IMG/VR virus record: IMGVR_UViG_3300042386_001233
Location: 124,001-188,000 of that record
Reading direction: 5' to 3' (one strand)
DNA length: 64,000 bases
Of the stretch, positions 22,692 through 48,988 are shown piece after piece (within the stretch, counting starts at the first letter, position 1; the number at the start of each line of letters is the position of its first letter). A model generated the notes under the pieces. That model ran no database searches. It was not told the DNA's origin and saw nothing but the letters and a program-made list of their open reading frames with translations. Made by a program: the position numbers and the translations under genes.

Positions 22692-23072
22692 ATGAAATAC
22701 TTTTATTGTGTCATTTTGGTCATTCTTTTGTCTAGCAGCACTAAAGCTCAACAATGGTCTAATCCTGAAAATGCTAATCTTACAAGCACTATGACAAATA
22801 TGATGGTTAATTTTGGTATAGCAGGAATGCAGTCATCCCAACCTTATGCAGCAAATAATACTAATCAATATCTAGATTATCAAAATGGATATTATCAAGA
22901 ACTACAAAATAATTTAACTAGAACTGAAATATATTTTCAAAAAAGACAAACTAATATGTACTACAGAGAACTTGAGTTTATTCAAAAACGAGAACTCAAA
23001 AATCTTAAAAAATATGATCAGTTGACCATACCAGAGCTTAATAGAATTTTTGGGAAAGATAGCAGATATTAA
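22692..23072 (+). CDS. hypothetical protein with signal peptide
   Basis: MKYFYCVILVILLSSSTKA-QQ N-terminus. Confidence 0.55.
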   Translation: MKYFYCVILVILLSSSTKAQQWSNPENANLTSTMTNMMVNFGIAGMQSSQPYAANNTNQYLDYQNGYYQELQNNLTRTEIYFQKRQTNMYYRELEFIQKRELKNLKKYDQLTIPELNRIFGKDSRY

Positions 23073-24004
23073 AATATTGGATTTACAATCCCATAACCTT
23101 GATATTTTTTTATTCCTTTATATCTAGGATTTTCTAAAGAAATAGCATGTAGTTTAAATACTTCTATATAGTCTTCAAATGTTTTAAGCTGATATTTTTT
23201 ATGCTTATTATTATAGCTTAATAGTAATGAAGCACAACCGACGACAAATGGATTGCTCATGCTTGTTCCGCTCATACTAGCATATCTATTTCCTGGAACA
23301 CATCCAATAATATTGTGACCAGGAGCCAAAAAGTCTAAATCATCTCCACTACAGGTAAATGAAGTTCTATTCATATTTTCGTCTATTGCTCCTATAGATA
23401 TAGTATTTTTATATCTAGCTGGATACATTATTTCGGCATTTTCTCCGCTATTTCCAGCAGCGCAAAAAACAACACATCCCTTACTATTAGCATAAGTGAT
23501 AGCATCCTCTATAACCTTCGCCGGTGCTGGTGAACCAAGACTCATAGTTATAAAATCTACATCTCCGTGGTTTGCAGCCCAGTAAATTCCGTCTGCAACT
23601 GTGTTCATTGATCCTGAACCATCGTCTCCAAGTGATTTAACCGGAATAATTTTAGTCATAGGAGCAACTCCAACCATGCCAAAACCATTATCTGACGCAG
23701 CTATAGTAGAAGAAACATGCGTTCCGTGACCAGCACCATCTATTGGTTCTTTATTTTGATTAATAAAATTTTTCCCAGGTAATAAATTATCTACTAAGTC
23801 TTTATGGGTTAGGTCACATCCTGTGTCTATAACAGCTACGACTACTCCTTCTCCTTTAGACTCTTTCCATAGATTAGGCACATTAAATTTTGTAAGTTCC
23901 CATCCCTTAAATTGTGGATCATTCACAGATAGTCCATACACATCCTCTCTAACATATGGTAACAGTGAAATATTATTTTTCTTTTTTAAAAAACCTCTAG
24001 CCAT
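23069..24004 (-). CDS. subtilisin-family (S8) serine protease, intracellular ISP-like
   Basis: VAVIDTG, HGTHV, AAGNSG, SGTSMS triad; no signal peptide; N-terminal LLPY. Confidence 0.93.
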   Translation of the reverse strand: MARGFLKKKNNISLLPYVREDVYGLSVNDPQFKGWELTKFNVPNLWKESKGEGVVVAVIDTGCDLTHKDLVDNLLPGKNFINQNKEPIDGAGHGTHVSSTIAASDNGFGMVGVAPMTKIIPVKSLGDDGSGSMNTVADGIYWAANHGDVDFITMSLGSPAPAKVIEDAITYANSKGCVVFCAAGNSGENAEIMYPARYKNTISIGAIDENMNRTSFTCSGDDLDFLAPGHNIIGCVPGNRYASMSGTSMSNPFVVGCASLLLSYNNKHKKYQLKTFEDYIEVFKLHAISLENPRYKGIKKYQGYGIVNPIF

Positions 24005-24006
24005 GA

Positions 24007-24756
24007 TTACTCCTTAGCTTGTTTTAGTGTTTTTTTTATCCAATCGTGGAATAAACTTACCCTAGTATGACAACTTTCGTCTGTATATGTTGAGTTTGGC
24101 TTCCCGTCATAGCCTATAACAGACGAGTGGATTCCGGCAAGTTTGTTGCCTATGAACAAACCCCCGCCACTATCCCCACTACCTATAAGATATTCTAGTT
24201 CTGTCATTTTCTCGTTTCTTCTCGATGGCGAGCAGATTAAAATCTTTCTTTCTGTTCTATCTATAAAATTAGATCCAGCTCTTTTTTTTCCATCTGCTCT
24301 TTCAATACCAGTATTAAATGTTCCAGTAAATCCCAAACCGGCCATAGAGCATACTTTACCTACCTCATCTGAATCAATATATAATTCAGGATAATGGTCT
24401 AATTTAATTTCTTTTTCTATATAACCTAAAGCAATATCATTATAACCAAATACTTCTGTTTTATAATCTTCGTGAATAATAACTTTATCAATCTTGTATT
24501 GTTCTTCACCCACTGTAACTGACCAACTATGGCAATTTTCTACCACATGAGCAGCTGTAATTATCCAATGTGGATCTATTATAACAGCAGATCCACAAGA
24601 CAGTCCTTTGCCGTCAAAACAACATAGTTTAACAACACTATGAAATTTAGACCCATATTCTACATACCTTGAGTCTGGAGTATTAGGATCTATGGTTCCA
24701 GAATAAGCTGCAGAACCTATCAAAAATACTACTAAAGCTAGTAAAAATTGACGCAT
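24007..24756 (-). CDS. trypsin-like (S1) serine protease with signal peptide
   Basis: ITAAHV, NDIAL, GDSGGG; hydrophobic N-terminus. Confidence 0.93.
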   Translation of the reverse strand: MRQFLLALVVFLIGSAAYSGTIDPNTPDSRYVEYGSKFHSVVKLCCFDGKGLSCGSAVIIDPHWIITAAHVVENCHSWSVTVGEEQYKIDKVIIHEDYKTEVFGYNDIALGYIEKEIKLDHYPELYIDSDEVGKVCSMAGLGFTGTFNTGIERADGKKRAGSNFIDRTERKILICSPSRRNEKMTELEYLIGSGDSGGGLFIGNKLAGIHSSVIGYDGKPNSTYTDESCHTRVSLFHDWIKKTLKQAKE

Positions 24757-25069
24757 GGTTTTGCACTTTGGGAGAATAGGGACGATTCTTAACCTTATTT
24801 AAATACACCGAGCAATCATTAATCACGTCAACATTCCAACTACTATAATCCATTAAATGGCCAAAAACAAAATGACAATCAGAACACAAAGTAATAAGAT
24901 TAGTTAAATCCAACTCTCTGCTTGGATTGACATGAAAAGGCTCTATATGATGTACCTGAATTTTTTTGCATGAACCGCAAGCCATGCAGCAGGGTTGTGA
25001 TAGTAGGTGTTTTTTTCTTATTAATGACCATTTAGGAGATCTGTCGGATAAAATATTCCACATTTTCAC
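24683..25069 (-). CDS. HNH endonuclease
   Basis: CMACG...QVHHIEP...NLITLCSDCH..GH. Confidence 0.85.
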   Translation of the reverse strand: MKMWNILSDRSPKWSLIRKKHLLSQPCCMACGSCKKIQVHHIEPFHVNPSRELDLTNLITLCSDCHFVFGHLMDYSSWNVDVINDCSVYLNKVKNRPYSPKVQNHASIFTSFSSIFDRFCSLFWNHRS

Positions 25070-25073
25070 TATA

Positions 25074-25646
25074 TTATCCGCTTATTTCCATATAAATACA
25101 GTAATTCCCAACATTATCAAACCATGTTCCACTATCCCATATTCCACAATATACATATCCAGAGGATGGGGCAACTATATTTCCTCCCAATCCTATATAA
25201 AATGATCCAGTAGTAGTAAACGGTATTGAAGAAGCATCTGTTGTTGATAAAACGCCAAATACTGCATTATAATTGTTTATAAAAACATTAGGAGTACTAT
25301 AAATGCCACGAGCATCACTAATACAAGCACCAACAGCACAAGAAACACACCCTCTAACAGAGAAACTTATAGTCTGACCCGCTGTCACAAACTGCTGACC
25401 AATTCTTTTAAGTGTTGCTCCATCGGAATAAACTAATGATGTTTCAATGGGTAGGCACGTAATACTTTCGGCACTTATACACATTCTGGTTGGCGTGGGT
25501 GTGATTGTTGGTGTGGGTGTAGGGGTATTAGTTTTTGTTATTGTGGGTGTTAGACTTACTGTTGGAGTTATTGTTGGTGCTGGTGTGCTGCTACTCAGGG
25601 GTTTTTGAGTAGCTACTGGACAGCAATTTATATTAATAATTGTCAT
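25074..25646 (-). CDS. Cys-anchor + Thr/Pro stalk + putative lectin-like domain protein
   Basis: N-terminus [22 protein letters not shown] repeats, C-terminal F.IG...APSSG.VY.GIWD...DN.G.Y (PA-IL/LecA-like by eye). Confidence 0.6.
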   Translation of the reverse strand: MTIININCCPVATQKPLSSSTPAPTITPTVSLTPTITKTNTPTPTPTITPTPTRMCISAESITCLPIETSLVYSDGATLKRIGQQFVTAGQTISFSVRGCVSCAVGACISDARGIYSTPNVFINNYNAVFGVLSTTDASSIPFTTTGSFYIGLGGNIVAPSSGYVYCGIWDSGTWFDNVGNYCIYMEISG

Positions 25647-26233
25647 ATTTTATAACCACTTACTCTTGAGATCATAGGTCCAAAACATCCACCCGGAGAT
25701 ATTGATTCAAATTTTAGTAATGTACTATTAGAATTAGCAGTAAAAGTCTCAGAAATAGTATTCCAGCCAAAAGTTTCTGCTGAAACTTGAAACCCATAAC
25801 TTGGACACGTATAAGTATATGTTTTATTAAGTATTATATTAGTACCAGTTAGCGTTAATTTCATAACTTTATCAGCAACATTATTATCAAAACGCACCCC
25901 ACAATTTCCGCTTAGATCAAAATAAATTACATAATTTTGTCCAGGTATTGTTGTAATAGTTTGACTGATATATCCAATCCCACAAGCGTTTAAGTCTACA
26001 AAATATCTATCAAAACCATAATAATTATAATCTACAGAACTAAAAGTCCAATTACTAAGGGAATTTTCTAATGATCCGTTTATCACTATGTTAACAGGTT
26101 CTGCGCTTGGCGTAGGCGTTATTGTTTGTGTAGGAGTAGGGGTATTGGTTTTTGTTATCGTGGGAGTAGGAGTAACACTACTTAATGGTTTTTGAGTAGA
26201 CACTGGACAGCAATTAATACTTATGATGCTCAT
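25643..26233 (-). CDS. Cys-anchor + Thr/Pro stalk + DUF642/choice-of-anchor-C-like carbohydrate-binding domain
   Basis: N-terminus [22 protein letters not shown] repeats, NIVINGSLE...VDLNA...[13 protein letters not shown]...FDLSGN...FTA...L.F.S...FGP. Confidence 0.7.
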
Positions 26234-28302
26234 GGGATATAGTTAATTTCTCTTTGGGCTATAAAATAGTAGGTGGGTTCTGGTGTAGGTTGAGGCGTAG
26301 AACTTGGTGGTGGTGTAGAGCTTGGGGTTGCTGCCGGTGTGCTGCTAGATGTTGGTTCTGGAGTTTGAGTCGGAGTAATACTTGGAGTTGTTGTTATTGT
26401 CGGCGTTACGGTAGCAGTTGGTGTTGGGGTTGGAGTTACGCAGCATGATTCAAAGCAATACGTTCCAGGAAATGATACCCAAGAACTTGGAATATTAGAT
26501 GGCGAAACAGATGTAGAATCAAAATATGCATCTTGACAATTTGTAAAATGCATAGCCCTAATTCTAAAAGTTAGAGGCTGATCCGCACTTGTGCAAGTAC
26601 CGTCTCCACTTTTATTCTCAAAACTATTTAGATAATACTGATAAGATGAAGCGTTAGGATTAAATATGCAGATATTATCTACTATATCATCAACCGATCC
26701 GCTTTGACCATTTGCGTCCAGTGCTTGTATCTGATACCCCTCTATACAGCCTTGACTACCTGGTTCAGTATTTCTGTTCCATGTTAAATATATAATTACT
26801 TGGTTAGGGCTTTCAGTACCATCCTTTATACATGAACAGGCAGCACTTTGAATACTAGGAGTTAATAACTGACAATTATTTGTTGGCGTTGGGGTCGGAC
26901 TTTGGCTAGGCGGTGGAGTACAACAATTACAATTACTTGTATTTCCCTCAAATGCCCATACTGGAGGAACATTACATTGACAGGCAGTAGATATTCCAGT
27001 TATATTTAATCCTCCAACACAAGAAATATTAGCACTTGCTGTCCATTTATTAGCACATGAACTAGAACCAGTATATGCTACACTAGGATCACAAGTAACT
27101 GACATAAAGTATGTATCGCCACAAGCCAATGTGCCGCTACTAGTCCAATAATTTGGCATGACTTTAGTAAATAACAAATCTAGACTTATAGTTCTGGTTA
27201 TATTGTTACAATTTAATACAAATGTAGTCAAACCATTCCAGTCGCAGCAAGTAGCTCTACTTGGAGATGGCGTTAATGTCTGAGATGCTGTTAATGAAGG
27301 CGTTGGAGTTAGCGTTCTGGTGACTGTTTGGGTTGGTGTTCTTGTTGGAGTAGGAGTGCAACAACTGCAATTATCAAAATTGCCAACAAAACTCCAAATA
27401 GGAGGAGCGTTACATTGACAGGCTTCTTTTATTCCAGTAATTATTAGACCAGTAACACAGGATATGGTTAATGAAGAAGTCCATTTATTTATACATGAAC
27501 CTGATCCTGTGTATCTAGCATTTGGATCACATGTTATCGTAGAACTAAAAGTATCTCCACATGATAAACTTCCACTAGCTTGCCATGTATTTGCTGCTGT
27601 TTTTGTATAGGCTACTGGAATGACTAAATTGCCACAAGAAGCATCAAACTGTAAGAATGTATTACCGTCCCACTCACAACATGTAACAGTAGATGGGCTT
27701 GGAGTATTTGTCGGAGTAGCAGTAATTGTGATAGAAGGAGTAATAGAGGGTGTTACTGTAGCAGTAGCAGATCTTGTGATAGTAACTGTTGGGGTTTGGC
27801 TTACTGTAATACTTGGTGTTTGCGTTGGTGTTTGCGTAGGTGTTGGTGTCTGTGTATTGGTCTGAGTAATACTAGGAGTTAGTGTAGGGGTCGATGTAGC
27901 TGTTCGACTATTAGTGGGGGTTGCAGTTGGTGTTCTTGTATTAGTAGGGGTGTTTGTTCTAGTTGTTGTTATGCTTGGAGTTACGGTAGGGGTTACTGTT
28001 CTTGTTAGTGTTCTAGTTGGTGTTCTTGTTGGGGTAACTGTTCTAGTTACAGTAATGCTTGGAGTTATTGTAGGGGTAAGTGTTGGTGTCGGTGTTGGCG
28101 TTTTTTTAGGGGTTCTAGTTGGTGTTGGAGTTTTAGTAGGTGTCTTAGTAGGCGTTTTACTAAGGGAATTTCTATCTATAAAAGGACACCCATCATCCGA
28201 CCCTATCCTTGGAGGTTTTGGAGTTTCTGTTGGTGTTCTGGTTGGTGTTGGAGATGGCGGAAGTATTTTCCGCTCATTTTGTCCGTTCATTCTGTTTGTC
28301 AT
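26230..28302 (-). CDS. large mucin-like Thr/Pro/Ser-rich protein with two Cys-rich repeat domains
   Basis: 690 aa; long TPT tracts separate two ~110 aa homologous Cys-rich domains and a third beta-rich Cys domain. Confidence 0.8.
26920..27684 (-). repeat. internal duplication: two Cys-rich domains (27358-27684 and 26920-27252)
   Basis: TCC.W.G.T...W..SG.L.CGDT...TCDP...YTGS.SC.NKWT.S..ISCV.GL.ITGI..ACQCN.PP.W.F.GN..NC.CC occurs in both. Confidence 0.9.
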
Positions 28303-28305
28303 TTA

Positions 28306-29307
28306 TTACAATACTTTCGCAGCTATTAAACATCCTTTTGACACTGAATGTAACGGATCGGCGGCATGCTTAACTTCTTTAATAGACAAAGGAAAATTAT
28401 TTTCTGATAGTTTTTTCTTAAAATGTTCAATATAACCACCAGCTTGTGATGTTCCACCAGCAATGACTATTGTTAGTGGGTCTTTAAACTTTGGTAAAGC
28501 TTTATGATCTGTTAGTGCTGCTGTTAATTGTTTAGTAGTATAATCTATTAAACGATCATAATATGACGATACAGCTGCTAATATAGGATTATCATTATGC
28601 TGACCAACATTAAAATTTCCACCCTCTTTCTCAGCCTGTACGACACTATCCGGTTCCCCTGTGGCTACGGCGCTCATTCTATCTACCCAATCCCCAGATT
28701 TAGTTGTGGAAAATACAACAGTGGGTTCACCATTTAGCATTACACAAACATTAGTCATACCAGCACCACAGCTAATAGCTATACCAGTATAATCATTATC
28801 CGCTAACTCAGCATAGCATAAAGCTTCAGCTTCATTAATTGATCTAGCGTTATATCCACAGCTATCTAAAATAGTTTTGACTACATCTTCATGATATCCA
28901 ACATCAAAATCTTCATCTTCTTGGTCTACTGGTTGAGCAGGAACACAAAAAACGATCTTTTCAAGGGGCTCCGAAGATTGCCCGACTACTTCCTTTAATA
29001 TAAAAGCTAAGACTCTTTTCGCATCTTTCTCTTTTGCAGAAACAACTCCTTTGTACATTGGTCTTTTAGCGGTGTCGTTTCTCTCAATAGCTTTTTCAAT
29101 AGCATCTTGTCCGAGGATAATAAAAGAACCGTCTGTATCTTTAATAAAGACTTTTCCAGCCAATCCCTTTTCTATCATCTTTGTTGCTACTGGAGTAGAT
29201 GGCTTGATGATATAAAAGGCATCTCTAAAGTCTTTGTATTGTACTTTATCTCCTTTGTCCTCAGATAAAACAATATAGCTTGTTCCTACGTCAAGACCCC
29301 TAGCCAT
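28306..29307 (-). CDS. actin-like ATPase (volactin/MreB-FtsA superfamily)
   Basis: Phosphate-1 GLDVGTS, connect INEAEA, phosphate-2 ISCGAGMTNV, GDWVD, adenosine IVIAGGTS, terminal P..SVSKG. Confidence 0.88.
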   Translation of the reverse strand: MARGLDVGTSYIVLSEDKGDKVQYKDFRDAFYIIKPSTPVATKMIEKGLAGKVFIKDTDGSFIILGQDAIEKAIERNDTAKRPMYKGVVSAKEKDAKRVLAFILKEVVGQSSEPLEKIVFCVPAQPVDQEDEDFDVGYHEDVVKTILDSCGYNARSINEAEALCYAELADNDYTGIAISCGAGMTNVCVMLNGEPTVVFSTTKSGDWVDRMSAVATGEPDSVVQAEKEGGNFNVGQHNDNPILAAVSSYYDRLIDYTTKQLTAALTDHKALPKFKDPLTIVIAGGTSQAGGYIEHFKKKLSENNFPLSIKEVKHAADPLHSVSKGCLIAAKVL

Positions 29308-29310
29308 AAT

Positions 29311-29622
29311 TCACCTCTTTAAATTTTGTAGTTTATTAACAGACTCGGAAATATTCTCGTTTGACAATCTTGTATTTCCTAATTCGTTATATTTTTTCTC
29401 CATCCCATCAACACTTATATCTGTAACAAATTTTCTGTCATCTATAATAATCTTATTTTGACTTTTTTCATTATTATTATATTGTTTGTTTCTTTTTGAT
29501 ATTGGTTTTTCAATCATTGTATAACTACTATTGTTTAATCTTCCTATAATATAACCAATTCCAAAAGAGACAAAATTAAAAAGTACCAATATTATACTTA
29601 ACAGAGATGCAGTATCTATCAT
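29311..29622 (-). CDS. small N-terminally membrane-anchored protein
   Basis: One hydrophobic helix (LLSIILVLFNFVSFGIGYIIG) then a charged tail; AAGGAGG SD; 3 nt from the actin start. Confidence 0.7.
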   Translation of the reverse strand: MIDTASLLSIILVLFNFVSFGIGYIIGRLNNSSYTMIEKPISKRNKQYNNNEKSQNKIIIDDRKFVTDISVDGMEKKYNELGNTRLSNENISESVNKLQNLKR

Positions 29623-29663
29623 GTGGATAGCCTCCTTACCAAATTTACACCATACTATAAAAG

Positions 29664-29689
29664 AAAAAAGGAGCGATTGCTCGCTCCTT
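29664..29689 (-). terminator. rho-independent terminator after ruvB
   Basis: AAGGAGCGA-gcaa-TCGCTCCTT hairpin followed by a U-run on the minus strand. Confidence 0.8.
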
Positions 29690-29727: not shown

Positions 29728-30618
29728 CTATATCGTACCCATGACTCTGCCCTTTTGGGTACGAACAACATAACCCTTACGAACCAAAAACGGCTCAATA
29801 CTATTCTCGATAGTATCTAAAGCTATTCCAGTCATTGCTGATATAGACTTAAGACCCAAAGGATTACCCTTGCTTCGTCTCAAAGCATCAATATAAAGCC
29901 TATCATACAGATCCAAACCCTTACTATCTATACCCTGAGTAGAAAAAATGGTATCAATTGTACATGGATCGGTATGGCATATCTTGTAGTTTTTATACCA
30001 TAATAGTCTAGCATTAAGAATTCTCGGAGTACCCTTGCTTCTTTTTGCTATCTCAACCAAATCTTCATCAGAGATTTCTAGATCTAATTTAGCAGAGTTC
30101 AATCTTGCTACTTTAGCTAGATCATCATCCGTATAGAAAGAAAGATGTTCTTTGATTGTAAACCTGTCATAAAATGGCTGACTTAAACTTCCCCCACTAG
30201 TAGTCGCTCCGATAAGAGTAAACATTGGAAGATCAATAGTTTCTGGAGCATCTTCTGATGATATACTAAGTACAAAATCTTCCATGATAGGATACAAAAA
30301 CTCCTCTACTGTTTTGGGCAACCTGTGTATTTCGTCAATAAACAACACAGACCTAGCAGAGATTCCCATAATATATGGCAAAAGATTTTTTATGCTACGA
30401 ATATTAGCAGCATTGAGAGTATAAAGACTGACCCCCATTTCGTTTGCTATAGCACTCGCTATGGTAGTCTTGCCAAGCCCAGGAGGGCCGTCTATTAAAA
30501 CATGAGGCAGCACACTGCTAGACATTTTACAGCCCATAGCAGAGATGCGTAGACGCTCAATAACGTCGCCCTGACCAATGATTTCATCAAAACTCTTCGG
30601 CCTTGTAACATTTGCCAT
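29728..30618 (-). CDS. ruvB: Holliday junction branch-migration AAA+ helicase RuvB
   Basis: RPKSFDEIIGQ, GPPGLGKTT, FIDEIHRL, LYPIMEDF, FTLIGATT, DRF, GTPR, IEPFL...RTQKGR. Confidence 0.95.
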   Translation of the reverse strand: MANVTRPKSFDEIIGQGDVIERLRISAMGCKMSSSVLPHVLIDGPPGLGKTTIASAIANEMGVSLYTLNAANIRSIKNLLPYIMGISARSVLFIDEIHRLPKTVEEFLYPIMEDFVLSISSEDAPETIDLPMFTLIGATTSGGSLSQPFYDRFTIKEHLSFYTDDDLAKVARLNSAKLDLEISDEDLVEIAKRSKGTPRILNARLLWYKNYKICHTDPCTIDTIFSTQGIDSKGLDLYDRLYIDALRRSKGNPLGLKSISAMTGIALDTIENSIEPFLVRKGYVVRTQKGRVMGTI

Positions 30619-39463: not shown

Positions 39464-40824
39464 CAGTTATATTATATAGAAAAGCTTTTGCCTTATCTAT
39501 AGAATGAAACTCTCCAAGAAAAACAGTTCCCGGTAGACCATCACTATCAACTGGTACTGATCCATATATTTGATAAAAGGGGTCATCATAAGCATCCTTT
39601 TCTTTTTCTAAAAATTCCGCAGATGTTCTGATTTCATCTATATAAGTACCTCCCTCATAATCACTATATTCTCTTACAGTAACCAGTAAAAAATATTCTA
39701 TGGGAGATTTGGGATTATTATTCTTAATCCTACCATTACAAAGAGTATTACCCATCATTTTTCCTATAAAGAGGAATTACAGTATTTTGATCAACATAAG
39801 GGTTGTTTTGAGTTCTTAAATCAAACAAATCACCACGACCATTAATTCTGGCCCAAGCAACAGGCTTATCAAGAGAATCTTTTAAAGACTGCATCTGCTG
39901 AGACACTTCCAAGTATTCGTTTGTCTGTTCAACAGCAAATTCATTAGCTCTATAGACTTCTTCAGCCCATTCTTTATTTTTCTCTTTTAGTTTTTTCAAT
40001 TCATCTTTGGCATTTTGCACAAAGAAAAGATCAGCCCCAGAAGCCCAAGCAAAATCAATAATACTCTCAAGAGGATTAGCGTGTTTTTCCATATAAGTTG
40101 CTAGTTCTATAAATGTCCTTCTTATTCCATCTTCCCAATTTTCATATTCTTCGATCATTCTTTAGCTGTTCTATTTCTCTTTCCAATTTAGCTACTCTTT
40201 CGTATATATCATGGTTAGCTAAACGAGGCAGGTCTTTTGCTGGTGTTTTGCCATCTCCAATTCTTGTATCCCACAACTCAGCAATGCTATCATACTGGTA
40301 TAAGAAGAGTTCGCCAAGTCTTGGAATAACATCACAACCATTCTTGGCTTTTGGTAGACTAAAAGATCCGTTCATTCTAAGACAGTAATTTCTGCTCCCT
40401 TAAATTCAGGCTTATAGAAGCCTGTCAAACTGTCCTTCTGATAAGTATCTTCAACGATGAATCTAATATCATACTTATTCTCCATTATGGAAACTTCTGA
40501 ACTAGTAGAAATCTTTTTGTTCTCAACAATATATTGAATAATTGCTATCTTAATTTCTTCTTTAGTTAGATTGTATAGATTATATGTCATAAATTAAAAG
40601 TCATCTCCCATTCGATATTCATCAAACTTTTCTTGACATTCTTCATTAGCATCATAATATCCAACATCATAACCTTGTTCATGGCCCATAGCATACGCTG
40701 CCATCAACCATTTGATTATATCGTCAGTCTTTCCTTTTGCAACACAATTTCTTATGTCGCTTATAGCTCTTTCGTGTCTGACGCTATATCCTTCAACTTC
40801 ATTTATCCAGTGGTCGAATGTCAT
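39435..40824 (-). CDS. cluster of five small hypothetical proteins
   Basis: ORFs 39435-39758, 39748-40158, 40142-40375, 40372-40590 and 40594-40824 overlap or abut. Confidence 0.5.
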
Positions 40825-40853: not shown

Positions 40854-41128
40854 TAGGAGCGGTGAGAATCGAACTCACACTGGATGGATTTTCTTGCCAC
40901 TATAGTTTTCACTACCATTTCTGTTTGTGGTCTGGACTTTATCTTAACCATAACTTTCGTTTTAGGTTCCTGCCGTCAAGTCTCTACACCTTCATAATAT
41001 TTCTATTAAGCTTGGCTCGGTATTAGCAGTTAAGCCTCCACCGAATTTGACAGGTTCTACATCAAAGATTTCTCTTTAAGCACTCAAATTGTATAAGTCC
41101 ATTGTCTCTGCCGTTGGACTACGCTCCC
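40854..41128 (-). tRNA. trnL: tRNA-Leu(UAA) interrupted by a group I intron
   Basis: Exon1 GGGAGCGUAGUCCAACGGCAGAGACAAUGGACUU (41128-41095) + exon2 AAAAUCCAUCCAGUGUGAGUUCGAUUCUCACCGCUCCUA (40892-40854); spliced loop CUUAAAA. Confidence 0.9.
40893..41094 (-). mobile_element. self-splicing group I intron (tRNA-Leu UAA type), 202 nt, no ORF
   Basis: Inserted after U34; IGS GAGU pairs with ACUU; P AAAUUCGGUG, Q AAUACCGAGCCAA, R GUGUAGAGACUUGACGG, S AAGAUAAAGUCC; terminal G. Confidence 0.9.
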
Positions 41129-41235: not shown

Positions 41236-41520
41236 TCAGCCGTTAGAATGAGCAGCCTTTAGACGGCGAACAGTCTCAGCCATAGCCTCGACATTATCCA
41301 CAGTCTTTGTGGGCTTTGCTCGCTCCATCGCTGGCAGTTCAATGCCCTTCTTAGCCAGAGCGGCCTTTGTACGAGCATAACGAGCCATCGTACTAGCAAC
41401 CTTCTGACCAGTCTTACTGGCAATCTCAGCATAGGTCTTGCTGGAAAAAACTGCCTCAAGGAACTGGTCATCACTGCAACGAACACGACTCTGCTTCTCA
41501 GTAGTAGTAACTTCAGCCAT
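41236..41520 (-). CDS. small basic HTH-like DNA-binding protein
   Basis: SKTYAEIASKTGQKVASTMAR; GGAGG SD; own promoter. Confidence 0.6.
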   Translation of the reverse strand: MAEVTTTEKQSRVRCSDDQFLEAVFSSKTYAEIASKTGQKVASTMARYARTKAALAKKGIELPAMERAKPTKTVDNVEAMAETVRRLKAAHSNG

Positions 41521-41577
41521 AATCAACCTCCAAATTCTTAACCAATCTACAACCAAGGCTCAGTCAAGCGACTGATC

Positions 41578-44745: not shown

Positions 44746-44797
44746 TTAATGTCTCCAGTAAGGCGAGATAATTAAATACACCATTACTGGAAATTGG

Positions 44798-46376: not shown

Positions 46377-46440
46377 TTGGTTTTCTCCTACTCATAGTTA
46401 CACCAAATGTCCCAAATTGTTCCCAGTTTTTTGAAGAAGA

Positions 46441-48345: not shown

Positions 48346-48354
48346 AATATTAAG

Positions 48355-48707
48355 TGGACGATTGGGGAATCGAACCCCGTCCAGTATAAACGTCTATATA
48401 AACTTCTACATTGTTAGTTACTTGTTATCACACAAATAACAAAGCTATCAGAATTATCTGAGTCAGATTGAGTACAATCATCATTCCTATTTATGTCTGG
48501 TAGGACTACCATATCCGAATATCGGAGTCAGCATGATTTGGTAATAAGGCTCATGCCGCCCCACTCATTACCTAATTAATTAGGCAGCGAGAGCGAGAGT
48601 TGAAACTTCGCCAATTAACATTTTTAATCGACTTTTATACTGGCCGGTCGATCAACCAGTCAATGCAATTTATATTTCTTTTTACCTGTCGATACCAGGA
48701 ATCGCCC
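48355..48707 (-). ncRNA. ssrA: tmRNA; tag peptide (A)GEVSTLALAA* at 48612-48580
   Basis: 5' GGGCGAUUCCUGGUAUCGAC and 3' GGACGGGGUUCGAUUCCCCAAUCGUCCA; G3.U70, A73; PK1-like region; UUAAUU before resume codon GGC; tag ends LAA-UAA. Confidence 0.93.
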
Positions 48708-48891: not shown

Positions 48892-48912
48892 CAGAATCCT
48901 TCCTGTTTAAAG

Positions 48913-48988
48913 TAGGGCGAGTTGGAGTCGAACCAACCTATGAACACCTTATAAGAGTGTCGGATGCAACCGGCTTACCTTCCGCCCC
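48913..48988 (-). tRNA. trnI: tRNA-Ile(UAU)
   Basis: GGGGCGG/UCGCCCU acceptor, anticodon arm ACACU-CUUAUAA-GGUGU, T-arm GUUGG-UUCGACU-CCAAC, A73. Confidence 0.85.

What the first reader, a model, noticed from the sequence alone, without database searches (positions are those of the whole stretch)
28306..29651. Phage actin resembling haloarchaeal volactin, paired with a membrane-anchored protein and heading the stalk/protease operon
Seen: a complete actin-fold motif set. The string GLDVGT...RPM.KG...P.E...F..PA.P.D...YH...INE..A..Y.ELADN..TG..IS.GAGMTNVC...GDW.D...ATG...AGGTS matches my recollection of the volactin (disk-shape) family rather than MreB/ParM. A terminator (29664-89) and a GGTGTA motif (29646-51) precede a single-TM gene, followed with gaps of 4 nt or less, or overlaps, by actin, three stalk proteins, HNH, trypsin and subtilisin. 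Known: characterised jumbo-phage cytoskeletons are mainly PhuZ tubulins. Inference: a membrane-tethered actin filament that positions assembly or reshapes the host cell.
Basis: partly seen in the sequence, partly recalled or inferred. Interest (0 to 1): 0.8.

Follow-up and report, generated by a model that had tools for sequence, protein, structure and literature searches.

The report
Lake jumbo-phage volactin actin with membrane adaptor
A large uncultured lake-water phage encodes an actin-like protein of the "volactin" family, so far studied only in salt-loving archaea, always paired with a small membrane-anchored partner, which points to an undescribed phage cytoskeleton that could be tested by expressing the two genes.

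Summary
Window 28306-29307 (-) encodes a 333-aa actin-fold ATPase. It matches Pfam Volactin end to end (223.6 bits, cut-off 35) and is 36.7% identical over 99% of its length to a true haloarchaeal volactin ortholog. It falls below the cut-offs for MreB, MamK, BeeR and salactin.

The AlphaFold model is confident (pLDDT 95.5); its nearest solved folds are MamK, BeeR and MreB.

The genome is a roughly 244-kb lake phage with rIIA/rIIB, RuvB and a DNA ligase.

The upstream 103-aa gene (29311-29622) has an N-terminal transmembrane helix, a variable linker and a strongly conserved C-terminal region. It lies next to the actin in all 80 related phage loci examined. A small upstream partner also occurs in 7 more distant phage volactin loci, with or without a transmembrane helix; an eighth is inconclusive.

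The three "stalk" proteins are a variable insert found only in the closest relatives. The conserved block is RuvB, partner and actin, usually followed by a trypsin-like protease.

Best reading: an ATP-driven filament tethered to the host membrane by a dedicated adaptor. Polymerisation, binding and biological role are inferred, not shown.

I found no paper describing phage volactins. I rate it a new variant of a known kind.

The parts
28306..29307 (-). Volactin-family actin-fold ATPase, 333 aa
   Evidence: Pfam PF25216 at 223.6 bits (cut-off 35) over the full length. It is 36.7% identical over 99% of its length to Natrinema volactin, E = 2e-58. Invariant residues are D6, G8, T9, E159, G181, G183, G284 and G285. 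AlphaFold pLDDT is 95.5, and the nearest folds are MamK at TM 0.74 and MreB at 0.69. It is the most conserved gene of its neighbourhood, with a median of 83% identity.
29311..29622 (-). Small partner protein, 103 aa: N-terminal transmembrane helix, variable linker, conserved C-terminal region ending in a basic helix
   Evidence: No Pfam, PHROG or NCBIfam match. Hydrophobic helix at residues 4-30. It is present upstream of the actin in 80/80 loci, and its stop lies 0-18 nt before the actin start in 74/78. The C-terminal roughly 45 residues are nearly invariant. All 50 distinct homologues have a hydrophobic 19-mer scoring at least 1.82.
29645..29652 (-). TGGTGTAA, a candidate phage promoter element about 23 nt before the partner's start codon
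   Evidence: A GGTGTA(A/T) motif is kept at this position in diverged relatives whose spacer otherwise differs: L008, L011, L019, L026, L062, L068, L070 and L076. It is not enriched window-wide (5 found, 4.3 expected). However, all 5 lie on the coding strand, and 3 are intergenic and 20-30 nt before a start codon.
29659..29689 (-). Intrinsic terminator after ruvB
   Evidence: 9-bp stem with 5 G-C pairs, a GCAA loop and a T run. The same hairpin-plus-motif arrangement occurs in relatives that have a spacer here. Other relatives have no spacer, and the partner gene follows ruvB directly.
29728..30618 (-). RuvB-type AAA+ helicase, the conserved upstream neighbour
   Evidence: Pfam RuvB_N plus the RuvB C-terminal domain. 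It passes the NCBIfam RuvB equivalog cut-off, 286.4 against 282. It is present in 80/80 loci and in L087, where the actin is 53% identical.
25074..28302 (-). Three Pro/Thr-rich, Cys-rich proteins (690, 196 and 190 aa): a variable insert, not part of the conserved module
   Evidence: Translations. The 196-aa protein carries DUF642. All three are absent from 71/71 loci at 81-86% actin identity.
23069..25069 (-). HNH endonuclease, trypsin-like protease with a signal peptide, and subtilase S8: frequent but not constant downstream neighbours
   Evidence: Pfam matches. The trypsin N-terminus MRQFLLALVVFLIGSAAYSG looks like a signal peptide, and both catalytic triads are present. Among 71 loci, trypsin is present in 54, HNH in 33 and S8 in 23.

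Best explanation
The two genes form a phage cytoskeletal module. The 333-aa protein is an actin-fold ATPase of the volactin family. It probably binds ATP and assembles into filaments in the host cytoplasm, as Haloferax volactin does.

The 103-aa protein, encoded 3 nt upstream and probably translated together with it, is a single-pass inner-membrane protein. Its short N-terminus faces out and about 70 residues face the cytoplasm. Its conserved C-terminal region, which ends in a basic amphipathic helix, probably docks onto the actin. That would tether or nucleate filaments at the membrane, much as ParR, AlpA, RodZ, FtsN and PilN dock onto their actin-fold partners.

The module sits in the rIIA-rIIB-RuvB block. 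It is therefore likely expressed with replication and recombination genes, and likely organises infection in space, for example by positioning replicating DNA or assembly sites relative to the membrane.

Shown: family membership, intact nucleotide-binding motifs, the confident actin fold, strong purifying selection, the constant pairing with the partner, and the partner's architecture.

Inferred: polymerisation, the actin-partner contact, membrane topology, expression timing and biological role.
For: Family and fold:
- Pfam Volactin at 223.6 bits, full length.
- The only PLSDB plasmid hits are haloarchaeal (35-37% identity, E = 1e-55 to 2e-58).
- The Natrinema hit is a true volactin ortholog. 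It is 82-97% identical to the 120 best hits, and all that carry an organism name are haloarchaea. NCBI names one of them 'disk-shape morphogenesis protein volactin'.
- Phosphate-1, phosphate-2 and adenosine motifs are invariant across 54 diverse family members.
- AlphaFold pLDDT 95.5 and pTM 0.92. Foldseek gives MamK filament TM 0.74/0.76, BeeR 0.73 and MreB 0.69.
- Volactin forms dynamic filaments whose tips are bound to the membrane in Haloferax (PMC10869688).

Selection:
- In 71 loci the actin has a median identity of 83%, against 71% for RuvB, 44% for the partner and 49% for trypsin.

Partner:
- Adjacent in 80/80 loci, with a gap of 0-18 nt in 74/78.
- Transmembrane helix in all 50 distinct sequences.
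- Nearly invariant C-terminal block.
- A small gene ending with a basic helix of the type KLK.[LM]K lies directly upstream of the actin in 7 more distant phage loci: L087, L088, L089, L090, L093, L094 and L095. An eighth, L091, has a small upstream gene without a clear motif.
- A profile of the C-terminal block finds the partners of L087 (E = 6.7e-7) and L094 (E = 1.1e-3) among 1016 ORFs.

Other support:
- The actin has no N-terminal amphipathic helix of its own.
- Fused N-terminal adaptor domains in bacterial family members (HU, ParB-type HTH, zinc ribbon) show the same two-part logic.
- Precedent: a co-transcribed adaptor upstream of a prophage actin, AlpA-AlpC (PMC4446434).
Against: - There is no experimental or transcript evidence. 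No RNA run was listed for this sequence.
- The actin-partner contact was not modelled, because no multimer prediction was available.
- The partner's conserved region is modelled with low confidence (pLDDT 55-68) and mostly as coil.
- The charge bias across the transmembrane helix is weak: median -1 before and +1 after. The topology is therefore only a prediction.
- For the partners of L088, L089, L093 and L095, homology is not statistically demonstrable (E = 0.4-5). It rests on position plus a short motif.
- Several of these distant partners lack a transmembrane helix, so membrane tethering may not be general to phage volactins.
- Haloarchaeal volactin loci show no comparable upstream partner.
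Confidence: 0.55

Rival explanations
1. It is a DNA-moving machine of the ParMRC or AlpAC type. The filaments push or pull phage genomes, and the small protein is the adaptor between filament and cargo rather than only a membrane anchor.
For: The adaptor-then-actin gene order matches the alpAC operon, whose products move prophage DNA and are needed for efficient replication (PMC4446434). The module lies next to RuvB, rIIA/rIIB and a DNA ligase. Bacterial volactins are fused to HU and ParB-type HTH DNA-binding domains. Distant partners have basic N-termini.
Against: The window's partner has a transmembrane helix and no detectable DNA-binding domain in Pfam, PHROGs or NCBIfam. The family profile finds no ParM in the PDB at E up to 10, whereas MamK, BeeR, MreB and FtsA are found. 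No centromere-like repeat array was looked for near the operon.
Confidence: 0.17
2. It is a host-remodelling factor. The phage filament changes host cell shape or blocks division, by analogy with volactin's role in the rod-to-disk transition, to enlarge the cell or time lysis.
For: Volactin depletion delays the rod-to-disk transition in Haloferax (PMC10869688). The pair is membrane-associated. It lies near rIIA/rIIB, which PHROGs files under lysis inhibition.
Against: The window clade is not orthologous to the haloarchaeal clade. No peptidoglycan-synthesis or division gene is linked to the module in any of the phage loci examined. The host is unknown.
Confidence: 0.15
3. It is a non-polymerising scaffold ATPase of the PilM or FtsA type. 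It docks as monomers or short oligomers onto the cytoplasmic tail of a single-pass membrane protein, to build a membrane complex for export or virion exit.
For: PilM-PilN and FtsA-FtsN are actin-fold proteins paired with single-pass membrane proteins. PilM and FtsA appear among the structural and profile hits. A secreted trypsin-like protease lies downstream in most loci.
Against: The model aligns over its whole length with MamK and MreB (TM 0.69-0.76) but poorly with PilM (0.52) and FtsA (0.59). The insert after the first beta-sheet lies where subdomain IB of MreB and actin lies. The characterised family member forms long filaments.
Confidence: 0.1
4. It is a recently captured cellular gene with no phage-specific role, or a decaying passenger gene.
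For: None beyond the general mobility of genes in large phages.
Against: It is the most conserved gene of its neighbourhood across 71 diverged loci. All nucleotide-binding residues are intact. A database search finds 1734 homologues, the closest on contigs up to about 250 kb. The phage clade branches apart from the haloarchaeal clade. A 5-kb stretch that includes the gene pair is present, at full word share, in at least 24 lake-water runs dated 2018-2024.
Confidence: 0.02

Closest known systems
Volactin (VolA, HVO_2015) of Haloferax volcanii and its haloarchaeal orthologs; Pfam PF25216
   Same: Same Pfam family at full length. It is 35-37% identical over 99% of its length to the haloarchaeal proteins. 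It shares the volactin-type 'GAG' phosphate-2 and 'GGTS' adenosine motifs (motif table in the supplement of PMC10869688). Volactin filaments are attached to the membrane by their tips, which is what a membrane adaptor would produce.
   Different: It is encoded by a phage of low-GC lake-water origin, not by a haloarchaeon. It branches in a separate subclade, and the haloarchaeal proteins form their own tight clade (support 99). It has a dedicated upstream membrane partner that the two haloarchaeal loci examined lack. [quoted passage not shown]
AlpC-AlpA of Corynebacterium glutamicum prophage CGP3
   Same: A phage-encoded actin-like protein with a co-transcribed small adaptor encoded upstream. 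AlpC-AlpA is expressed early and needed for efficient replication (PMC4446434; PMC5539076).
   Different: AlpA is a DNA-binding adaptor of a temperate prophage. Here the adaptor is a membrane protein, the actin belongs to another family, and the gene content is T4-like and lytic. Sequence similarity to AlpC and AlpA was not tested, because no sequence was at hand.
MamK, MreB and BeeR (bacterial actin families with solved filaments)
   Same: They are the nearest solved structures by profile (MamK E = 2.6e-16, BeeR 1e-10, MreB 2e-9) and by fold (TM 0.74, 0.73 and 0.69). MreB also works with a single-pass membrane partner, RodZ (PDB 2wus is among the hits).
   Different: The scores are far below the family cut-offs: MreB Pfam 23.3 against 27, MamK 29.8 against 400, and BeeR 30.3 against 530. 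Identity to these structures is only 15-19%.
PhuZ tubulin spindle of nucleus-forming jumbo phages
   Same: A phage-encoded cytoskeletal polymer in a genome above 200 kb, used to organise infection in space (reviews PMC8314001 and PMC7950403).
   Different: PhuZ is a tubulin-fold GTPase, not an actin-fold ATPase, and it needs no membrane adaptor. Whether this phage also has a tubulin or a nucleus shell protein was not examined, because only 64 kb were available.
ParM-ParR-parC plasmid segregation
   Same: An actin-fold filament plus a small adaptor whose C-terminal helix inserts into the actin. This last point is established knowledge and was not tested here.
   Different: No ParM is detected by the family profile. 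The gene order is reversed, with the adaptor first. The adaptor has a transmembrane helix and no recognisable DNA-binding fold.

Membership tests
Volactin family (Pfam PF25216) | Full-length match above the curated gathering score | tested here: met
   223.6 bits against a cut-off of 35, E = 5.7e-66, covering model positions 1-321 of 321.
Volactin family (Pfam PF25216) | Significant full-length similarity to bona fide haloarchaeal volactin | tested here: met
   36.7% identity over 99% of the query, E = 2e-58, to Natrinema DVR14_24150. That protein is 86% identical to a Halosegnis protein that NCBI names volactin.
Volactin family (Pfam PF25216) | Actin-fold ATPase motifs (phosphate 1, phosphate 2, adenosine) intact | tested here: met
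   D6, G8, T9, E159, G181, G183, G284 and G285 are invariant in 54 family members. The model has pLDDT 95.5 with a canonical actin fold.
Volactin family (Pfam PF25216) | Orthology with haloarchaeal VolA (same clade) | tested here: not met
   The haloarchaeal proteins form one clade (support 99). The window groups with the metagenomic representatives P0121, P0123 and P0124 (support 96) elsewhere in the tree. This was a quick tree with a single, very long MreB outgroup.
Volactin family (Pfam PF25216) | Dynamic filaments in vivo and a role in cell shape | not testable with these tools
   Known only for Haloferax (PMC10869688).
MreB/Mbl (PF06723) | Score above the gathering threshold | tested here: not met
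   23.3 bits against 27, and only a partial match (residues 56-209).
MamK (NCBIfam NF040964) | Score above the curated cut-off | tested here: not met
   29.8 bits against 400. MamK is nevertheless the nearest solved structure.
BeeR (NF053558) and salactin (NF053533) | Score above the curated cut-off | tested here: not met
   30.3 against 530 for BeeR, and 27.3 against 400 for salactin.
ParM / ParMRC | Sequence relationship to ParM | tested here: not met
   The family profile finds no ParM chain in the PDB at E up to 10.
ParM / ParMRC | Adaptor with a DNA-binding fold, plus a centromere repeat | tested here: inconclusive
   No Pfam, PHROG or NCBIfam domain is found in the partner. It has a transmembrane helix instead. 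Centromere-like repeats were not searched for.
AlpAC-type phage actin system | Small adaptor co-transcribed upstream of a phage actin-like gene | tested here: met
   The partner's stop lies 3 nt before the actin start. The pair is conserved in 80/80 loci. Co-transcription itself is inferred.
AlpAC-type phage actin system | Adaptor binds phage DNA and the actin | not testable with these tools
   This needs biochemistry.
FtsA/PilM-type actin-fold scaffolds | Subdomain 1C in place of IB | tested here: not met
   The model aligns over its whole length with MamK and MreB (TM 0.69-0.76) and poorly with PilM (0.52) and FtsA (0.59). The insert at residues 30-90 lies at the IB position.

The most novel reading that the evidence does not exclude
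Volactin-type filaments, tip-anchored to the host inner membrane by a dedicated single-pass adaptor, are a widespread and so far undescribed phage cytoskeleton. They would be an actin-based counterpart of the PhuZ tubulin spindle, used by abundant uncultured lake jumbo phages and by other large phages to position replication or assembly. Haloarchaeal volactin would then be one narrow branch of a family that lives mostly in phages and bacteria.
Probability: 0.3. Interest if true: 0.8.

Novelty: new variant of a known kind. Interest (0 to 1): 0.62.

Why it matters
Phage-encoded cytoskeletons are known mainly from PhuZ tubulins of nucleus-forming jumbo phages and from one prophage actin, AlpC.

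Here an actin family known experimentally only from a haloarchaeon turns out to be large:
- 949 clusters at 50% identity match the window protein.
- It is common in uncultured phages. IMG/VR holds 297 loci encoding a relative.
- A 5-kb stretch that includes the gene pair is held, at full word share, by at least 24 lake-water runs.
- It is absent from every cultured phage record searched. Only two metagenomic huge-phage genomes match among 50,697 records, and it has no PHROG family.

The constant pairing with a membrane adaptor gives a concrete two-protein system that can be expressed, imaged and reconstituted without culturing the host.

It also bears on how volactin filaments attach to the membrane by their tips, which was left unexplained in Haloferax.

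Finally, it bears on how actin-fold filaments recruit interchangeable adaptors: a transmembrane helix, an amphipathic helix, HU, ParB-type HTH or a zinc ribbon.

Tried and rejected
- **GTDB genome scan.** It found only four close relatives, all phage contigs binned into unrelated MAGs. An alignment query would have reached cellular homologues. I obtained those instead from PLSDB and from a homologue search with the Natrinema protein.
- The alignment held four rows from annotated public records. The Natrinema sequence was later used only in tools that accept such references.
- **Transcript evidence.** No RNA run was listed.
- **GGTGTA motif.** As a 12-mer with 2 mismatches, and as TGGTGTAW exact, it is not enriched window-wide. 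Only its conserved position in relatives and its strand and intergenic bias support it.
- **Homology of distant partners.** A profile of the C-terminal block is significant only for L087 and L094. L093, L095 and L088 rank high but are not significant, and iteration did not help.
- **Partner structure.** The model is low-confidence outside the two helices, so I ran no fold search on it.
- **Viral structure library.** BFVD holds no close model. The best match has TM 0.57 at 12% identity.
- **Cluster look-up.** The ten representatives carried no informative names and no accession numbers.
- **Literature.** Searches for volactin, PF25216, phage actin and phage cytoskeleton found no report of phage volactins.
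- **Hsp70 fragment or ordinary ParM.** Rejected on the Pfam, NCBIfam, PDB-profile and fold results.
Full report
**1. Observation**

The ORF at 28306-29307 on the minus strand is complete, with 333 codons, an ATG start and a GAGGTGA ribosome-binding site 5 nt upstream. Three nucleotides upstream ends a 103-codon gene (29311-29622), whose N-terminus is a hydrophobic helix.

Upstream of that gene lie TGGTGTAA (29645-29652) and a 9-bp-stem intrinsic terminator with a T run (29689-29659). Pfam confirms the HNH, trypsin and subtilase S8 domains.

**2. What the window is**

- The window encodes rIIA (378.7 bits to phrog_612) and rIIB.
- It encodes a RuvB that passes the NCBIfam equivalog cut-off.
- It also carries an ATP-dependent DNA ligase, several HNH endonucleases and many glycosyltransferases.
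- Six IMG/VR viral contigs encode the actin at 100% identity, and the fully fetched ones also encode its nine neighbouring proteins at 100%. One of these contigs is 243,821 bp long.
- A 5-kb stretch around the pair is held, at full word share, by at least 24 lake-water or freshwater metagenome runs from 2018-2024.
- No record in the INPHARED phage collection matches the DNA.

It is therefore an uncultured lake jumbo phage.

**3. Identity of the actin**

- Pfam Volactin (PF25216) matches end to end at 223.6 bits, against a cut-off of 35. MreB scores 23.3, below its cut-off of 27.
- NCBIfam models for BeeR, MamK and salactin score about 30 bits, against cut-offs of 400-530.
- A tblastn search of 72,556 plasmid records finds only haloarchaeal replicons, at 35-37% identity over 99% of the protein.
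- The Natrinema hit is the conserved chromosomal-type gene of Halobacteria. It is 82-97% identical to the 120 best hits of a homologue search, and all that carry an organism name are haloarchaea. NCBI names one of them 'disk-shape morphogenesis protein volactin'.
- Across 54 diverse family members, D6, G8, T9 (phosphate 1), E159, G181, G183 (phosphate 2) and G284, G285 (adenosine) are invariant.
- The AlphaFold model is very confident (pLDDT 95.5, pTM 0.92).
- Its nearest solved structures are the MamK filament (TM 0.74/0.76), BeeR (0.73) and MreB (0.69). PilM and FtsA fit worse.
- The family profile finds MamK, BeeR, MreB and FtsA in the PDB, but no ParM.

**4. Size and spread of the family**

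- An exhaustive HMMER search finds 949 clusters at 50% identity, 272 of them at E up to 1e-30.
- A word-indexed search finds 1734 proteins. The 120 best are 81-96% identical and lie on contigs up to about 250 kb.
- IMG/VR holds 297 loci that encode a relative.
- Among 50,697 deposited phage genomes, only two metagenomic huge phages (485 and 595 kb) have a homologue. No PHROG family matches.
- The ESM Atlas lists volactin-domain clusters labelled Uroviricota and Acidobacteriota. These include HU-volactin fusions and intein-bearing viral forms.
- I confirmed an HU-volactin fusion in a bacterial-looking context (PilZ, SPOR, amidase).
- In a quick maximum-likelihood tree the haloarchaeal proteins form one tight clade (support 99) nested among metagenomic sequences.
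- The window clade groups with P0121, P0123 and P0124 (support 96). The two huge phages sit elsewhere.

The single MreB outgroup has a very long branch, so I do not rely on the root.

**5. The partner**

tblastn of the window's proteins against 80 related IMG/VR loci shows the small gene upstream of the actin in all 80. Its stop lies 0-18 nt before the actin start in 74 of 78.

All 50 distinct sequences have a hydrophobic 19-mer scoring at least 1.82 near the N-terminus. A variable, low-complexity linker follows. Then comes a nearly invariant block of about 45 residues ending in ...S[IV]NKLKN[LM]K[RG]. AlphaFold models a confident helix at residues 4-30, a disordered middle and a C-terminal helix at 91-102.

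Basic residues follow the transmembrane helix, which suggests a cytoplasmic C-terminus. The charge bias is weak, however.

In seven more distant phage loci, at 33-53% actin identity, a small gene again lies directly upstream and ends in a similar basic helix. An eighth, L091, is less clear. The N-terminal part varies:

| Locus | N-terminal part of the partner |
|---|---|
| L087, L094 | transmembrane helix |
| L088, L089, L093 | hydrophobic or amphipathic N-terminal helix |
| L090, L095 | neither |
| L091 | small upstream gene without a clear motif |

A profile of the C-terminal block finds the L087 and L094 partners significantly. The others are not significant. Two haloarchaeal volactin loci show no such partner.

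**6. What is and is not part of the module**

In the 71 loci at 81-86% actin identity:

| Gene | Loci with the gene (>60% of its length matched) | Median identity |
|---|---|---|
| Actin | 71/71 | 83% |
| RuvB | 68/71 | 71% |
| Partner | 71/71 | 44% |
| Trypsin-like protease | 54/71 | 49% |
| HNH | 33/71 | 58% |
| Subtilase S8 | 23/71 | 60% |
| Three Pro/Thr-rich proteins | 0/71 | not applicable |

These loci were chosen by actin identity, which inflates the actin's lower bound. Even so, the actin is clearly the most constrained gene of the block.

The order rIIA-rIIB-...-RuvB-partner-actin-HNH-trypsin-S8 persists at 53% actin identity (L087). The 'stalk' proteins are a lineage-specific insert. 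The trypsin-like protease has a signal peptide and the subtilase does not. I see no evidence that ties the proteases to the actin functionally.

**7. Regulation**

Where relatives have a spacer between ruvB and the partner gene, it holds a terminator hairpin followed by a GGTGTA(A/T) motif about 20-25 nt before the start codon. The rest of the spacer differs between them.

In other relatives the partner gene follows ruvB with no spacer. In the window the motif is not over-represented overall. However, all five copies are on the coding strand, and three lie in intergenic spacers just upstream of genes. I regard it as a candidate phage promoter element and nothing more.

**8. Mechanism**

The best-supported reading is a two-component cytoskeletal module. 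It consists of an ATP-dependent volactin-type filament and a dedicated single-pass membrane adaptor whose cytoplasmic C-terminal region binds the actin.

This follows from four things:
- the family's known behaviour, namely dynamic filaments whose tips are bound to the membrane in Haloferax (PMC10869688);
- the intact catalytic motifs;
- the strict gene pairing;
- the adaptor's architecture.

General precedent also supports it: actin-fold proteins recruit small partners through short peptides or helices, as in ParR, AlpA, RodZ, FtsN and PilN.

Fusions of volactin domains to HU, ParB-type HTH and zinc-ribbon modules in bacteria show that the family works with interchangeable N-terminal or upstream adaptors. 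The phage version would then be the membrane-anchored form of the same scheme.

The biological role is open. It could be positioning of replication or assembly, DNA movement, or host remodelling. I rank these options in the rival explanations.

**9. Novelty**

Pfam and automatic cluster names already label such phage proteins as volactin-domain proteins. The family assignment itself is therefore not new.

Full-text searches found 17 papers that mention volactin. The 14 listed deal with archaea or general cell biology, and none reports a phage homologue. No paper mentions PF25216. Searches for phage actin and phage cytoskeleton returned only AlpC, plasmid-prophage ParM-like proteins and PhuZ.

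What appears undescribed is:
- the breadth of the family in phages;
- its conserved membrane adaptor;
- the placement of haloarchaeal volactin as one narrow branch of the family.

**10. Verdict**

It is a new variant of a known kind, the known kind being an actin-like filament with an adaptor. Interest is moderate to high, mainly because the two-gene system can be tested directly in heterologous hosts.

Noticed in passing
window 48352-48707 (-): Phage-encoded tmRNA. Rfam RF00023 scores 77.4 bits against a gathering score of 47, full length. ARAGORN did not report it.
   Followed up: no
window 40911-41104 (-): Group I catalytic intron (RF00028, 56.9 bits against 50), lying between the small ORFs 40594-40824 and 41236-41556. 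The interrupted gene was not identified.
   Followed up: no
window 48912-48988 (-): tRNA-Ile with anticodon TAT, the only tRNA in the window.
   Followed up: no
P0122, P0131, P0147, P0197, P0202, P0207, P0231, P0241, P0263 and others: About 16 of the top 150 volactin cluster representatives are roughly 700 aa long, and at least some carry inteins with LAGLIDADG domains. There are two insertion sites: just before the G181-A-G183 phosphate-2 motif, and just before G205-D206.
   Followed up: partly
P0218, P0153, P0162, P0169, P0236, P0196, P0126, P0185: Bacterial volactin-domain proteins are fused to various modules: HU (confirmed, in a PilZ/SPOR/amidase context), ParB-type HTH (weak match) and N-terminal zinc ribbons. 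There is also a tandem double volactin, and a volactin-Wzz-ParA-like kinase fusion. In Haloferax the gene next to volA (HVO_2014) is a small CPxCG zinc-finger protein.
   Followed up: partly
window 25074-28302 (-) and window 1-22700: There are three Pro/Thr-repeat, Cys-rich proteins. Two share the N-terminus [17 protein letters not shown], and one carries DUF642. The same window holds a large set of glycosyltransferase and sugar-nucleotide genes: GT4, GT2/GlcNAc, a DegT aminotransferase, UDP-galactopyranose mutase and an IMPDH-like enzyme. This suggests phage-encoded glycosylation, perhaps of the Pro/Thr linkers. The local jump in GC content and GC skew at 26-28 kb comes from the Thr and Pro codons.
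   Followed up: no
window 44776-44783 and 46398-46405 (-): Two further copies of TGGTGTAW lie in intergenic spacers 20-30 nt upstream of start codons on the coding strand. This is consistent with a phage-specific promoter element.
   Followed up: partly
L081-L084: Contigs of this phage clade (76-83% actin identity) are filed in GTDB species genomes as MAGs of Chitinophagia, Flavobacteriales, Alphaproteobacteria and Thermoplasmatales. The mutually inconsistent taxa point to binning contamination, not to host information.
   Followed up: no
window 29728-30618 (-): The phage RuvB passes the NCBIfam equivalog cut-off (286.4 against 282), and is conserved in all related loci. None of the neighbouring genes I scanned matched RuvA or RuvC; the whole window was not scanned.
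   Followed up: no
window 24683-24756 (-): The HNH ORF (GTG start) overlaps the start of the trypsin-like gene by 74 nt. HNH is present in only 33 of 71 relatives, which suggests a mobile insertion.
   Followed up: no
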